DNA of 64,000 nt from Macrostomum lignano (Eukaryota), in the NCBI GenBank assembly GCA_002269645.1, contig NIVC01000601.1, positions 20,590-84,589 of the forward strand, written 5' to 3'. This document shows, piece by piece, positions 1,511-4,969 of this stretch. The position numbers and the translations under genes were made by a program. Numbering within the stretch: position 1 is the stretch's first letter; every line of letters begins with the position of its first letter. Under the pieces are notes generated by a model. That model was given only the letters and a program-made list of their open reading frames with translations. It had not been told where the DNA came from and ran no database searches.

Positions 1511-4500
1511 ATGTCGAATCTAGAAAAACTGGAGGAGCTAGAATGTCACTTTACCTGGCTCCCAGAGGATGGCAGCACGAACACAAGCATCGATGAAGTT
1601 ATCAAAAAGACTGAAAGAAAGATTGACCGCCAGCCTCACAAGAAGTCGGCTCATTTAACGACTCTGGCTTACCTATATACTCGCAAAAGGGGTAAGAACT
1701 TCGGTTTGGCTCACAAATGCCTCGAGGAAGCTCTGGCGATCGATGAGCAAATCCGGCGCGATAAGCAGGAAGATGTGCAAGTATCTAGCGAGTTTGTCAT
1801 CAGGGCCAACATGCTGCACCTCGAGCAGCTGAGAAAAGGACAAAATAGAACTCTGAAGCCTGCAGAAATCGAACCGAAAATGCAGAGACTTAACAGCCTG
1901 TGGAGCGACTCAAACAGCCAGGCCCGGGTGTACGGAGTGAAAGGTGTCACATTCGACTGCTTCGGTCCCATGAAGTATCCGGTTGGAGTCGTTGCCTTCG
2001 CGGAGGCGTCAAGGCTTCAGGCGAATAATTTCAACTGGTTGTACGGCGAGGCGTTCCTGAGAGCTCGATGCGACAGACAGGTTGTGAAGAAGCACGCCGA
2101 TAAAGCTCAGCTTCAGCTGTGGAGCAGGGCACGAGAAATTGGCGAGCGAACCGGACAAACAACTAACAATGCTACCTTCTACTCCAATTATGCTGAGGCA
2201 ATTCTTTACAACAGAAGATTGACTGAGCTATGCTGCGAACTTACGGATAGAGCAGTCGATATTCTTCGGAGAATGTCCGAGGAAGAGAAGGAGAACTCGC
2301 ACGTGGACATGAAGATCTGCTTGAAGACCTATAGGCACATTAAGAAAATTTCGAATCTGGACTGTGAAAGCCGTCGAAAAACATTACTTGAGGAAGCAGG
2401 AAAAGTAGCAATGATGCTCAAAGATCCAGACTTCTTTTTAACCATAGCCAATGAGGCTGAAGAAGCAGGAGACCGAGATAAAGCGATTGAACTGCTTGAA
2501 AGAGGCAAGCAATTAGCAGGTGAGCCGGGTCACATATGGCTGAATCTTCGCCTTTTGGAGCTACAAATGCAAACCTTGAACAAGCAGCAAGTTATCGATG
2601 AGTTTGTCTCCATGAGAGAGAGCTTCGGAGTTTATTTGAAGAACGTTTCAGCTATCGAGTTTCACAAGGCGCTATACTTGATAAAACAGGGCGATACAAA
2701 GGAGGCCTTAGAGTCATGCGTTGCTGCTTTAGAGGCCGATCCAAAAGTGGACCAGGTCTGGTTTAGCAAGAAGAAGGAGTTTTTTCTATGCCTAACCCAA
2801 AAGACTGCCGGCTTCGAGGAATATGTAGCCTGGTTTGCTGCCAACGTCGGCGACTTCAAAGAGCCGGTAAACATCGAGCCTCTCTTTCTACAGGCGCTTA
2901 ATAAAGATGCCAGCAACGAGTTCGCGCTTGAGCATCTGGGTCGTTTTTATATAAAAAAGGGCCGATTAGACAATGCCTCTGGCTGCTTCAGGAAGCTGCC
3001 AGACCACATTGAGTGCAAGTACAAGCTACTCGCTCAGTCGCTGCTGGAGGACCCGAATGCAAGCTTTCAGAAGCTGCAGGAGTGTCTACAGTGCGGTTGC
3101 AGAGATGCTGTGCCGAAGCTTCTAGAATTTCTTGAGCAACGAAAGGCGAGCCAAAACACTGCCGAGATTGTCATTAACGATGTCGTGAGTCGGAGTGCCC
3201 GGGACTCTCTGTTCTTCAGCACTCAGCTGTATGAGCTGTGCGCTGAAATGGAGGCCACACTACAGGATCCGAACAGGTTTTGGCTTCGCGAAGATAACAC
3301 GGAATCGACTAATGATCCTGTAGAGCTAGCGAAACGGAGAATCGCAAAGTTTTTAGAGCTGGACCAGCTCATGAGCACAGTGGCATCGAGTCGATCCTGC
3401 GATGGCTCAGGCGACCGGGGAAACTTGATGAGGTCCAGCAGACTACGTTTAACGAAGCAGCGTCTTGAGAGAGGAGGCAAAACTCAGCAACAAACGCAGG
3501 AGCTCAACAACCTCATCGTTTCAGTGGTGAAGGAGTCGAAGGAGGTTCTGGACCGCTCTCTAGTTGTCTTACTTTCTCGTTGCAAAAAAGAAGCGAAAGA
3601 TGCGAAAAAATTGGCACTATCTCGTAAGGAGAAAGAAAAGCGAAGCATAAATATCGACCACTATTATCCTCACGCGTTCAACAAAATCAAGAAGCAGCTT
3701 GGAAGTGACTTCCAAGAAAAGCTCAACAAGCTGGCTTTAGATGGCAAAGACACAAAAGCATTTGAGCGAGAATCACTGATAACCTATCTGAAAGAAGGAA
3801 AAAAAATTCAAACCCAACCAGGCGCCACAGCGACGACAAATAATTCGGTATCGCCTGAGAACGTCCGAAAATGTCTTTCAGAGGCAGTCGCCGAAATTGA
3901 CCCGAACTTCCATCAGCAGAAGAGCACGAAAGATATGTTCGAATTCATGGCCCGTCGTGAGCACAGGATTCTGTCACAGGAGGACTGCTGGATTGTCCAC
4001 TGGATCTACCTGGTGAACAGTGAGAAGCACTCAGCCGAGATTCTCGTGGCTGAGCTAAATGAACAGCTGCGTTCTGATTGGTCGGGAGGCGGCGAGTGCA
4101 ATAGAACGGCGTATGATGTGGCGCACCTGGCAGCGGAGTTCGCTGAAGAGACCTGGGCCGTCTTCTCGTGTGAGAGCAGATCTGTTGTACCCACTGGCGC
4201 ACATTCAACACAGGTAGTTGCTTGTGTCGGAGATTCTAAAAATGCCGAAGACGTAGCATCTAATGTCACGGTTACCGGAGGAAATGTTACTGGTGCTGGA
4301 GATGCAACTGGTCTCGAAGATGTCACTTGTGCTGGAGTAGCGGCAAGCAGCGTTGATCATGTTTCATTATACACTAGTGCTTCCAACAATCCCGACGAAA
4401 GGGACAATTCGCGCAGCTACTTTGGCCGAGGCGGCATAGCGAGAGGCGGCAGTGAGCACTTCCGAGGCCGAGGCGGCAGTGAGCACTTCCGAGGCCGAGG

Positions 4501-4969
4501 CGGCAGTGAGCACTTCCGAGGCCGAGGCGGCAGTGAGCACTTCCGAGGCCGAGGCGGCAGTGAGCACTTCCGAGGCCGAGGCGGCAGTGAGCACTTCCGA
4601 GGCCGAGGCGGCAGTGAGCACTTCCGAGGCCGAGGCGGCAGTGAGCACTTCCGAGGCCGAGGCGGCAGTGAGCACTTCCGAGGCCGAGGAGGCAGTGAGC
4701 ACTTCCGAGGCCGAGGCGGCAGTGAGCACTTCCGAGGCCGAGGCGGCAGTGAGCACTTCCGAGGCCGAGGCGGCAGTGAGCACTTCCGAGGCCGAGGCGG
4801 CAGTGAGCACTTCCGAGGCCTAGGCGGCAGTGAGCACTTCCGAGGCCGAGGCAGCAGTGAGAGAGGCGGTAAATATGAGCACTCCCGTAGCGATAGGACA
4901 AGTTCCGAAGCTACTGAAACCGGTGCCAAGGTAAGAGGCGAAGGAAGGTTCGCAAATCGAGAAGACTAA
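1511..4969 (+). CDS. Intronless IFIT-like TPR protein (1152 aa) with long C-terminal extension and RGG-repeat tail
   Basis: ATG at 1511, TAA at 4967-4969, ATTAAA at 4988-4993. LEELECHFTW (CHFTW at 1544-1558) matches the IFIT signature (IFIT5 LLELECHFTW). TLAYL..KRGKN..LAHKCLEEA and KGVTFDCFGPMKY...AFAEA...N...G.A...R.D follow the IFIT pattern KGWALLKFGGKYY...AFEKA...N...GYA...RLD. Further TPR-like helices follow (e.g. ALEHLGRFYIKKGRLDNASGCF). Confidence 0.85.
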   Translation: MSNLEKLEELECHFTWLPEDGSTNTSIDEVIKKTERKIDRQPHKKSAHLTTLAYLYTRKRGKNFGLAHKCLEEALAIDEQIRRDKQEDVQVSSEFVIRANMLHLEQLRKGQNRTLKPAEIEPKMQRLNSLWSDSNSQARVYGVKGVTFDCFGPMKYPVGVVAFAEASRLQANNFNWLYGEAFLRARCDRQVVKKHADKAQLQLWSRAREIGERTGQTTNNATFYSNYAEAILYNRRLTELCCELTDRAVDILRRMSEEEKENSHVDMKICLKTYRHIKKISNLDCESRRKTLLEEAGKVAMMLKDPDFFLTIANEAEEAGDRDKAIELLERGKQLAGEPGHIWLNLRLLELQMQTLNKQQVIDEFVSMRESFGVYLKNVSAIEFHKALYLIKQGDTKEALESCVAALEADPKVDQVWFSKKKEFFLCLTQKTAGFEEYVAWFAANVGDFKEPVNIEPLFLQALNKDASNEFALEHLGRFYIKKGRLDNASGCFRKLPDHIECKYKLLAQSLLEDPNASFQKLQECLQCGCRDAVPKLLEFLEQRKASQNTAEIVINDVVSRSARDSLFFSTQLYELCAEMEATLQDPNRFWLREDNTESTNDPVELAKRRIAKFLELDQLMSTVASSRSCDGSGDRGNLMRSSRLRLTKQRLERGGKTQQQTQELNNLIVSVVKESKEVLDRSLVVLLSRCKKEAKDAKKLALSRKEKEKRSINIDHYYPHAFNKIKKQLGSDFQEKLNKLALDGKDTKAFERESLITYLKEGKKIQTQPGATATTNNSVSPENVRKCLSEAVAEIDPNFHQQKSTKDMFEFMARREHRILSQEDCWIVHWIYLVNSEKHSAEILVAELNEQLRSDWSGGGECNRTAYDVAHLAAEFAEETWAVFSCESRSVVPTGAHSTQVVACVGDSKNAEDVASNVTVTGGNVTGAGDATGLEDVTCAGVAASSVDHVSLYTSASNNPDERDNSRSYFGRGGIARGGSEHFRGRGGSEHFRGRGGSEHFRGRGGSEHFRGRGGSEHFRGRGGSEHFRGRGGSEHFRGRGGSEHFRGRGGSEHFRGRGGSEHFRGRGGSEHFRGRGGSEHFRGRGGSEHFRGRGGSEHFRGLGGSEHFRGRGSSERGGKYEHSRSDRTSSEATETGAKVRGEGRFANRED
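4445..4849 (+). repeat. Coding 27-bp tandem repeat, 15 copies (GGSEHFRGR)
   Basis: Unit ggcggcagtgagcacttccgaggccga is in frame within the large ORF and almost invariant. Confidence 0.97.

What the first reader, a model, noticed from the sequence alone, without database searches (positions are those of the whole stretch)
1511..4969. IFIT-like RNA-sensor gene in an invertebrate genome, more than twice the size of vertebrate IFITs
Seen: a 1152-aa ORF with N-terminal LEELECHFTW and two further blocks that line up with IFIT1/IFIT5 (LAY..KRGKN..A..CLEEA; KG...FG..Y....AF..A....N....G.A....R.D). Established: IFITs are ~480-aa all-TPR, interferon-induced binders of 5'-triphosphate or cap-0 RNA, usually described as jawed-vertebrate genes. 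Inference: this is an interferon-independent IFIT-family sensor carrying extra C-terminal modules, i.e. a single-chain sensor-effector innate immune protein.
Basis: partly seen in the sequence, partly recalled or inferred. Interest (0 to 1): 0.9.

Follow-up and report, generated by a model that had tools for sequence, protein, structure and literature searches.

The report
Flatworm protein with an IFIT-type head
A flatworm (Macrostomum lignano) gene encodes a 1152-residue helical-repeat protein whose first ~190 residues are truly related to the vertebrate antiviral IFIT proteins, but the rest is not detectably IFIT-like, and it belongs to an undescribed invertebrate sister family with its own C-terminal domain of unknown function.

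Summary
The ORF is real (window 1511-4969, +, 1152 aa) and is Macrostomum lignano BOX15_Mlig030191g2. Its N-terminus carries CHFTW, the pentapeptide described as invariant in IFITs. The match to IFIT is specific: IFIT5 and IFIT2 are the only natural PDB hits to aa 7-186. An exhaustive search of 1.84 billion proteins returned 34 hits; the named ones are IFITs or Macrostomum paralogs. Profile-profile comparison gives E = 5e-15.

All of that signal lies in aa 5-191. Residues 201-620 show no IFIT similarity beyond generic TPR. On a tree of the N module the protein sits in a sister clade to deuterostome IFITs.

Of six alignable IFIT5 RNA-contact residues, R186 and Y156 are kept, E33 aligns with E29, and K150, T37 and Q41 are replaced (Cys, Lys, Lys).

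The "extra modules" are a conserved C-terminal helical domain (aa ~565-890) with no match in Pfam, PDB or PADLOC, and a copy-number-variable RGG-type 9-aa repeat. Paralogs with RRM fusions, plus the RGG array, hint at RNA binding. Nothing supports an effector activity. Both structure models were too poor to test an RNA tunnel.

Verdict: observation confirmed, IFIT relationship partly supported, sensor-effector claim untested.

The parts
1511..4969 (+). Complete single-exon coding sequence, 1152 aa plus TAA stop; Macrostomum lignano BOX15_Mlig030191g2
   Evidence: ORF list and translation. 100% identity to P0001 apart from the number of repeat units. 99.9% DNA identity to NIVC01000052.1.
1511..2083 (+). 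IFIT-type N-terminal module, aa 1-191. It corresponds to IFIT5 aa ~13-195, i.e. subdomain I plus the start of subdomain II. This is the only part with demonstrable IFIT homology.
   Evidence: phmmer/hmmsearch to IFIT5 3zgq aa 13-186. hhalign aa 5-191 against zebrafish IFIT10 aa 16-195: probability 98.4%, E = 5e-15. Exhaustive search hits to stingray, zebrafish and Ptychodera IFITs.
1544..1558 (+). CHFTW pentapeptide (aa 12-16), the IFIT signature loop between helices alpha1 and alpha2
   Evidence: Direct translation. Invariant between the two paralogs. Described as invariant among IFITs and as contacting helix alpha7 (PMC11462223).
1937..1978 (+). VKGVTFDCFGPMKY (aa 143-156), which aligns to IFIT5 EKGWALLKFGGKYY. 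I infer that this is the alpha7 region contacted by the CHFTW loop. It contains C150 (IFIT5 K150) and Y156 (IFIT5 Y156).
   Evidence: HMMER and MAFFT alignments. The KG....FG core is conserved across the family.
2066..2068 (+). R186, which aligns with the IFIT5 RNA-contact residue R186
   Evidence: It is Arg in nearly all family members and IFITs in the alignment.
2108..3190 (+). All-helical TPR-like middle region (aa 200-560). Pfam TPR models match aa 308-496 (nt 2432-2998). No IFIT-specific similarity; net charge -7.
   Evidence: Pfam, predicted helices, hhalign control, charge count.
3203..4180 (+). Family-specific conserved C-terminal helical region (aa 565-890). Core domain aa 782-890 (nt 3854-4180) with conserved R816-E-H818 (nt 3956-3964), W827, W831, N836-x3-H840 (nt 4016-4030) and Y868-DVAHLAAEFAE879 (nt 4112-4147). 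No known relative.
   Evidence: Conserved between paralogs and in ENA relatives. No hit in Pfam, PDB, PADLOC or Foldseek. Unrelated to the TPR or IFIT parts.
4196..4432 (+). Low-complexity Gly/Ala/Val/Thr/Ser-rich linker (aa 896-974), not conserved in sequence with the paralog
   Evidence: Alignment with P0002.
4443..4861 (+). 27-bp tandem array (15.5 copies, 98% matches) encoding RGG-type repeats (RGGSEHFRG). Net charge +15. Absent from all relatives.
   Evidence: Tandem Repeats Finder. 15 units here against 12 in GCA_002269645.1. The annotated 1062-aa product removes 63 aa of the array as an intron.

Best explanation
The gene encodes a cytoplasmic, all-helical repeat protein. It belongs to a previously undescribed invertebrate family related to IFIT through its N-terminal module only. 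Shown: the first ~190 residues are homologous to the IFIT head, including the CHFTW loop and the block aligning with the helix that loop is reported to contact. That head is followed by divergent TPR-like repeats and by a conserved, family-specific C-terminal helical domain. The same three-part architecture recurs in at least five Macrostomum paralog groups and in tandem arrays in a second, unidentified organism. Inferred: as in IFITs, the head clasps the following repeats into a closed solenoid that holds a single-stranded RNA. RNA affinity is increased in this copy by a recently expanded RGG array, and in a paralog by RRM domains. The C-terminal domain provides the family's own output, such as partner binding, self-association or possibly catalysis. 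Whether the ligand is a foreign RNA 5' end (an immune role) or an endogenous RNA is open. I rate RNA binding as the most likely activity and an antiviral role as possible but unproven.
For: IFIT-type head; Foldseek ranks IFIT5 first to third. The CHFTW loop and the block I take to be its contact helix are conserved together. Two of the six alignable IFIT5 RNA contacts are kept (R186, Y156), and a third aligns with an acidic residue, E33 with E29 (residue list from PMC9677429). Whole-length family architecture. RNA link: RRM_1 above Pfam threshold fused upstream of the module in paralogs P0017 and P0014; a 15-unit RGRGG-containing array with net charge +15 in this copy. Multiple paralogs and tandem arrays, as is usual for immune-type gene families. 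A real gene: a 3.4-kb open frame, conserved at 48% identity with a paralog along its full length.
Against: K150, the strongest single RNA contact in IFIT5, is Cys here and is C, N, S or H in relatives; T37 and Q41 are replaced. Thirteen of the nineteen tested IFIT5 RNA-contact residues lie where no reliable alignment exists. The middle TPR region is net acidic. With a broader ten-sequence family profile, plain hmmsearch reaches IFIT1 only at E = 0.078. Both AlphaFold models are low-confidence, so no tunnel or pocket has been seen. RGG and RRM evidence is guilt by association, and the RGG array is private to this copy and unstable. There are no expression or induction data, and there is no immune-gene neighbourhood.
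Confidence: 0.55

Rival explanations
1. It is a true single-chain IFIT-type innate immune sensor-effector. The TPR body recognises non-self RNA 5' ends, and the C-terminal domain executes a response such as RNA cleavage or signalling.
For: IFIT-type head. R186 and Y156 kept, and extra lysines (K33, K37) at the positions of T37 and Q41. The C-terminal core has conserved Arg, His and Glu residues (R816, H818, H840, H872, E876, E879). One paralog reads RNKAEH at the N-x3-H site, resembling an Rx4-6H HEPN motif. The family is expanded in tandem.
Against: No similarity of the C-terminal domain to any nuclease, HEPN or signalling domain in Pfam, PDB, PADLOC or Foldseek. The Arg of the putative Rx4-6H motif is absent in this protein (VNSEKH) and in most relatives, and the His is missing in P0007. 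K150 is lost. No induction data.
Confidence: 0.15
2. It is a housekeeping or germline ribonucleoprotein scaffold acting on endogenous RNA, for example in RNA granules. It shares only an ancient structural cap with IFITs and has no role in immunity.
For: The RGG array and RRM-fused paralogs are typical of RNP-granule proteins (general knowledge). IFIT-specific RNA-end contacts are only partly kept. There is no immune neighbourhood.
Against: Housekeeping scaffolds are usually single-copy and widely conserved. This family is patchy: 34 representatives in 1.84 billion proteins. It is fast-evolving, with 22-50% identity among Macrostomum paralogs, and is tandemly expanded.
Confidence: 0.2
3. It is a TPR protein-protein interaction scaffold that binds no RNA. 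The IFIT-like head is only a fold-stabilising cap, and the RGG tail is a neutral minisatellite expansion.
For: Most TPR proteins bind peptides or proteins (general knowledge). The middle region is acidic. The RGG array varies in copy number, is absent from all relatives, and lies in a genome region full of tandem repeats.
Against: The only characterised relatives of the head are RNA binders. R186 is conserved family-wide. There is an independent RRM fusion in a paralog.
Confidence: 0.1

Closest known systems
Vertebrate IFIT proteins (IFIT5, IFIT1, IFIT2; PDB 3zgq/4hor, 4hou, 4g1t)
   Same: The N-terminal ~190 residues are homologous and collinear. They include the CHFTW loop, the LAY block, the KG....FG..Y..A..F..A....N....G.A....R block, and residues aligning with IFIT5 Y156 and R186. 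The fold is all-helical and TPR-based, and the family evolves by repeated duplication.
   Different: There is no detectable similarity beyond residue ~191. K150, T37 and Q41 are not kept. The protein is 2.4 times longer, with a conserved non-IFIT C-terminal domain and an RGG repeat. On the N module it sits in a separate clade from deuterostome IFITs. The organism has no interferon system, and the CDS is intronless.
Short invertebrate IFIT-like TPR proteins (Ptychodera 'IFIT5-like' XP_070569834, centipede UniRef T1JLK3, ostracod Darwinula CAG0903353)
   Same: They share the CHF(T/K/S)W head and the following conserved blocks, and they also come from animals without interferon.
   Different: They are ~400-600 aa (or tandem duplications of that unit) and lack the AAEFAE C-terminal domain. 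The Ptychodera protein groups with vertebrate IFITs and the arthropod ones form a further clade.
Long-form paralogs in M. lignano (Mlig031348g1, Mlig010163g1-3, RRM-containing A0A1I8FW97) and in ENA assembly ERZ25074608
   Same: They have the same three-part architecture: IFIT-type head, TPR-like body, and the C-terminal REH / N-x3-H / YDVAH.AAEFAE domain. This is the family to which the window protein belongs.
   Different: Identity is 22-50%. None has the RGGSEHFRG array. Some add RRM domains or long Lys/Ser-rich inserts.
HEPN-domain RNases (for example the RNase L / Ire1 KEN domain)
   Same: The C-terminal core is a small all-helical domain with conserved polar Arg/His residues. One paralog has RNKAEH, which fits the Rx4-6H motif.
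   Different: There is no sequence or fold match. The motif's Arg is absent in this protein and in most relatives. This is a lead from memory that was tested only weakly here.

Membership tests
IFIT family | N-terminal CHFTW pentapeptide in the loop between helices alpha1 and alpha2 | tested here: met
   CHFTW at aa 12-16, aligned to IFIT5 C18-W22. The motif is described as invariant in IFITs (PMC11462223).
IFIT family | Significant, specific sequence homology of the N-terminal region (subdomain I and the start of subdomain II) to IFITs rather than to other TPR families | tested here: met
   PDB: only IFIT5 and IFIT2 as natural hits. In the 1.84-billion-protein search the named hits are IFITs or paralogs. 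hhalign E = 5e-15. Caveat: the broader profile gives only E = 0.078 to IFIT1.
IFIT family | Homology along the whole ~470-aa IFIT body (subdomain II, pivot helices, subdomain III) | tested here: not met
   With the N-terminal ~200 residues removed, hhalign probability is 2.7%. Only generic Pfam TPR hits at aa 308-496.
IFIT family | Conservation of the experimentally defined RNA 5'-end contact residues (IFIT5 E33, T37, Q41, K150, Y156, R186, Y250, R253, and others) | tested here: inconclusive
   Six residues are alignable. R186 and Y156 are kept and E33 aligns with E29. K150 is Cys, T37 is Lys and Q41 is Lys. The other 13 lie in unalignable sequence.
IFIT family | Closed TPR clamp with a positively charged RNA tunnel | tested here: inconclusive
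   The AlphaFold2 model has pLDDT 59.7 and pTM 0.45. IFIT5 is the top Foldseek hit but with TM 0.29-0.40. The middle region is net acidic.
IFIT family | Placement inside the IFIT clade in a phylogeny | tested here: not met
   In the NJ tree of the N module, deuterostome IFITs are monophyletic (95% bootstrap) and exclude the window protein, which groups with the long-form family (67%). This is a rough tree of 216 columns.
IFIT family | Induction by interferon or virus, and binding of 5'ppp or cap-0 RNA | not testable with these tools
   This needs expression data and biochemistry.
Generic TPR / TTC22-like proteins | N-terminus best matched by non-IFIT TPR proteins | tested here: not met
   No non-IFIT natural TPR protein matched aa 1-300 in the PDB or in the exhaustive library. 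Generic TPR hits are confined to aa 308-514. TTC22 itself was not compared directly.
HEPN ribonuclease domain (for the C-terminal core) | Rx4-6H motif at the start of the last helix of a four-helix bundle, with profile or fold similarity to HEPN families | tested here: not met
   The site reads VNSEKH here; it has Arg only in P0017 and lacks the His in P0007. There is no Pfam, PADLOC, PDB or Foldseek match. The model is too poor for a fold verdict.
RGG/RG-motif RNA-binding region | Clustered RGG/RG repeats in a low-complexity region | tested here: met
   15 tandem units, each containing RGRGG. The function is inferred from general knowledge and was not tested.

The most novel reading that the evidence does not exclude
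The long-form family represents an interferon-independent, pre-vertebrate branch of the IFIT lineage. In it an RNA 5'-end-reading TPR clamp is fused to a new C-terminal output domain with conserved Arg, His and Glu residues, which could be a new RNase or signalling fold. In a trans-splicing animal such as Macrostomum, it might distinguish self caps (m7G and trimethylguanosine spliced-leader caps) from viral RNA ends.
Probability: 0.12. Interest if true: 0.85.

Novelty: new variant of a known kind. Interest (0 to 1): 0.6.

Why it matters
In the literature I could search, IFITs are presented as an innovation of jawed vertebrates that arose together with interferon (PMC3688568). That study's invertebrate candidates were rejected as generic TPR proteins. 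Here the IFIT signature head (the CHFTW loop together with the conserved block that aligns with its reported contact helix) is shown with specific statistics in a flatworm, and by the same search in arthropods and a hemichordate. This would move the origin of at least the IFIT head to early bilaterians, much as has recently been argued for Mx (PMC11789081).

The flatworm-type family also joins that head to a conserved domain with no known relative. That gives a defined target for structural and biochemical work on what an IFIT-like module does without interferon. M. lignano can be knocked down by RNAi, so the question can be tested directly.

Tried and rejected
1. Full-length single-sequence searches (Pfam, PDB) gave only generic TPR hits and repeat-driven RTX/lipase noise from the Gly-rich array. 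The IFIT signal appeared only when the N-terminus was searched alone.

2. The annotated-database search with the ten-member family alignment returned only the two Macrostomum proteins, so that search was wasted. Low-complexity inserts probably filled the candidate list.

3. AlphaFold2 of aa 1-620 (two-sequence alignment) and aa 560-895 (eight sequences) gave pLDDT 59.7 and 51.2. They are unusable for pocket or electrostatics analysis.

4. Foldseek on the C-terminal model had a best E of about 1.

5. The collinear full-length hhalign match to IFIT (516 columns) was rejected as evidence for whole-length homology after the split control.

6. The HEPN idea for the C-terminal core was considered because of RNKAEH in one paralog. 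It was rejected as a membership claim because the motif is not conserved and there is no profile hit.

7. The idea that the C-terminal domain is simply more TPR was rejected (hhalign probability below 1%).

8. Pseudogene or chance ORF was rejected, because the 3.4-kb frame is conserved with a 48%-identical paralog and with relatives in other species.

9. The organism behind ENA assembly ERZ25074608 could not be identified.

10. Literature searches for invertebrate IFIT relatives, and for the gene identifiers, found nothing.
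Full report
**Observation.** The window holds one long open frame on the + strand. The first ATG is at 1511, the TAA stop is at 4967-4969, and the product is 1152 aa, with an in-frame stop just upstream. It is the Macrostomum lignano gene BOX15_Mlig030191g2. The same locus in assembly GCA_002269645.1 is 99.9% identical and also uninterrupted. It carries 12 rather than 15 units of a 27-bp repeat, and the public 1062-aa product is obtained by splicing 63 aa out of that array. 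A 921-aa paralog (48% identity) conserves the N-terminal half, including an invariant LECHFTW, and a C-terminal block, but not the tail repeats.

**Is the head IFIT-like?** Full-length searches find only generic TPR matches at aa 308-496. Searching aa 1-255 alone against all PDB sequences gives IFIT5 (aa 13-186, E = 6e-4) and IFIT2 as the only meaningful natural hits. A two-sequence profile improves IFIT5 to 9.5e-6.

An exhaustive HMMER search of 1.84 billion representative proteins with the aa 1-300 profile returned only 34 proteins. Those that carry names fall into two groups:
- IFITs or IFIT-like proteins: stingray IFIT5-like (4e-11, two copies of the module), zebrafish IFIT10 and the hemichordate Ptychodera "IFIT5-like" (both 3.6e-4 on that huge library), and proteins from a centipede and an ostracod.
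- Further Macrostomum paralogs.

No generic TPR protein appeared. The CHFTW pentapeptide is described as invariant among IFITs, lying in the alpha1-alpha2 loop and contacting helix alpha7 (PMC11462223). The second conserved block here (VKGVTFDCFG) aligns with IFIT5 EKGWALLKFGG, which I take to be that helix, so both sides of the clasp are conserved (this last step is inference).

**How far does the homology go?** Profile-profile comparison of the family with IFITs gave 97% probability over 516 columns. A control shows this is misleading. The N-terminal parts alone give 98.4% probability and E = 5e-15 (aa 5-191 against IFIT10 aa 16-195). The remaining parts (aa 201-620 against IFIT aa 206-482) give 2.7%. 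A bootstrapped NJ tree of the N module places human, stingray, zebrafish and Ptychodera IFITs in one clade (95%) and the window protein in a separate long-form clade (67%). With a broader ten-sequence profile, plain hmmsearch reaches IFIT1 only at E = 0.078, so the signal is real but modest.

**RNA pocket.** Nineteen IFIT5 residues have been tested for RNA binding (Table 5 of PMC9677429). Six lie in the alignable region:
- Kept: R186 (conserved almost family-wide) and Y156.
- E33 aligns with E29, but that column varies across the family.
- Replaced: K150 is Cys, T37 is Lys, Q41 is Lys.

The other thirteen cannot be aligned. AlphaFold2 models were poor (pLDDT 59.7 for aa 1-620 and 51.2 for aa 560-895). 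Foldseek ranks IFIT5 first to third for the N model, but with TM 0.29-0.40 and generic TPR proteins close behind. The middle region is net acidic.

**The extra modules.** Residues ~565-890 are conserved along the family. The core (aa 782-890) carries conserved R-E-H, two Trp, N-x3-H and Y-D-V-A-H-x-A-A-E-F-A-E. It has no match in Pfam, PDB, PADLOC or Foldseek and is unrelated to the TPR or IFIT parts. A HEPN-like reading, prompted by RNKAEH in one paralog, fails because the motif is not conserved.

At least eleven full-length proteins combine the CHF.W head with this domain, and short IFIT-like proteins and vertebrate IFITs lack it. The family occurs as several Macrostomum paralog groups and as tandem arrays in an unidentified organism in ENA assembly ERZ25074608. 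Two Macrostomum proteins place an RRM domain in front of the module. The tail of the window protein is a private, basic, copy-number-variable RGG-type array.

**Interpretation.** The IFIT relationship is real for the head only, and the protein belongs to a sister family, so "IFIT-related" is accurate and "an IFIT" is not. RNA binding is the most likely activity, based on the function of the only characterised relatives, the conserved R186 and Y156, the RRM fusion and the RGG array. This is inference. An immune role is plausible from the patchy, expanded, fast-evolving distribution but is untested. The sensor-effector idea has no support yet.

**Novelty.** In the searchable literature IFITs are held to be restricted to jawed vertebrates (PMC3688568). 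I found no description of CHFTW-bearing invertebrate relatives or of this architecture. Automatic RefSeq names such as "IFIT5-like" in Ptychodera show that the short forms have been noticed informally.

Noticed in passing
window 4443-4861; L003 12933-13270: The 27-bp RGG-encoding array has 15 units in the window and 12 in GCA_002269645.1. The public annotation places an intron inside the array, removing 63 aa. This could be an allele or homeologue difference, assembly collapse or an annotation artefact.
   Followed up: partly
window 6718-8002, 8540-8876, 9388-10071, 10845-11429, 15262-17627, 35591-37772, 38774-40691, 58608-64000 and many more: Much of the window outside the gene is tandem-repeat DNA with periods of 3-130 bp and up to ~200 copies. 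Many of the long 'ORFs' listed there are just open frames through repeats.
   Followed up: partly
window ~43220-43470 (+), within ORF 41918-43513: An exon-sized match to AMP deaminase (Pfam PF19326, E = 8.6e-33, profile positions 216-297) directly follows a 15-bp tandem array.
   Followed up: no
window ~51357-51430 (+), within ORF 51033-52076: A nuclear-receptor C4 zinc-finger fragment (Pfam PF00105, E = 6.4e-9), probably one exon of a nuclear receptor gene.
   Followed up: no
L001 (ENA ERZ25074608 ctg185430) 1-10291: A tandem array of family members in an unidentified organism: an 869-aa full-length gene, then a 96-aa C-terminal exon, then a 698-aa body and another 96-aa exon, flanked by retrotransposon ORFs.
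   Followed up: partly
L002 (ENA ERZ25074608 ctg184106) 2493-5060 and 16452-17363: ORFs hitting Pfam Monjiviricetes_fusion (a negative-strand RNA virus glycoprotein family) lie next to a family C-terminal exon. They look like endogenous viral or retroelement envelope genes.
   Followed up: no
P0017 and P0014 (M. lignano paralogs, not in the window): RRM_1 domains are fused upstream of the IFIT-type head, whose motif there is degenerate (SPFKW). P0017 also has RNKAEH at the N-x3-H site of the C-terminal domain.
   Followed up: partly
P0023 (Hypanus sabinus IFIT5-like) and P0031 (Darwinula stevensoni): Both contain two copies of the CHF.W head within one predicted protein. These are either internal tandem duplications or fused gene models.
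   Followed up: no
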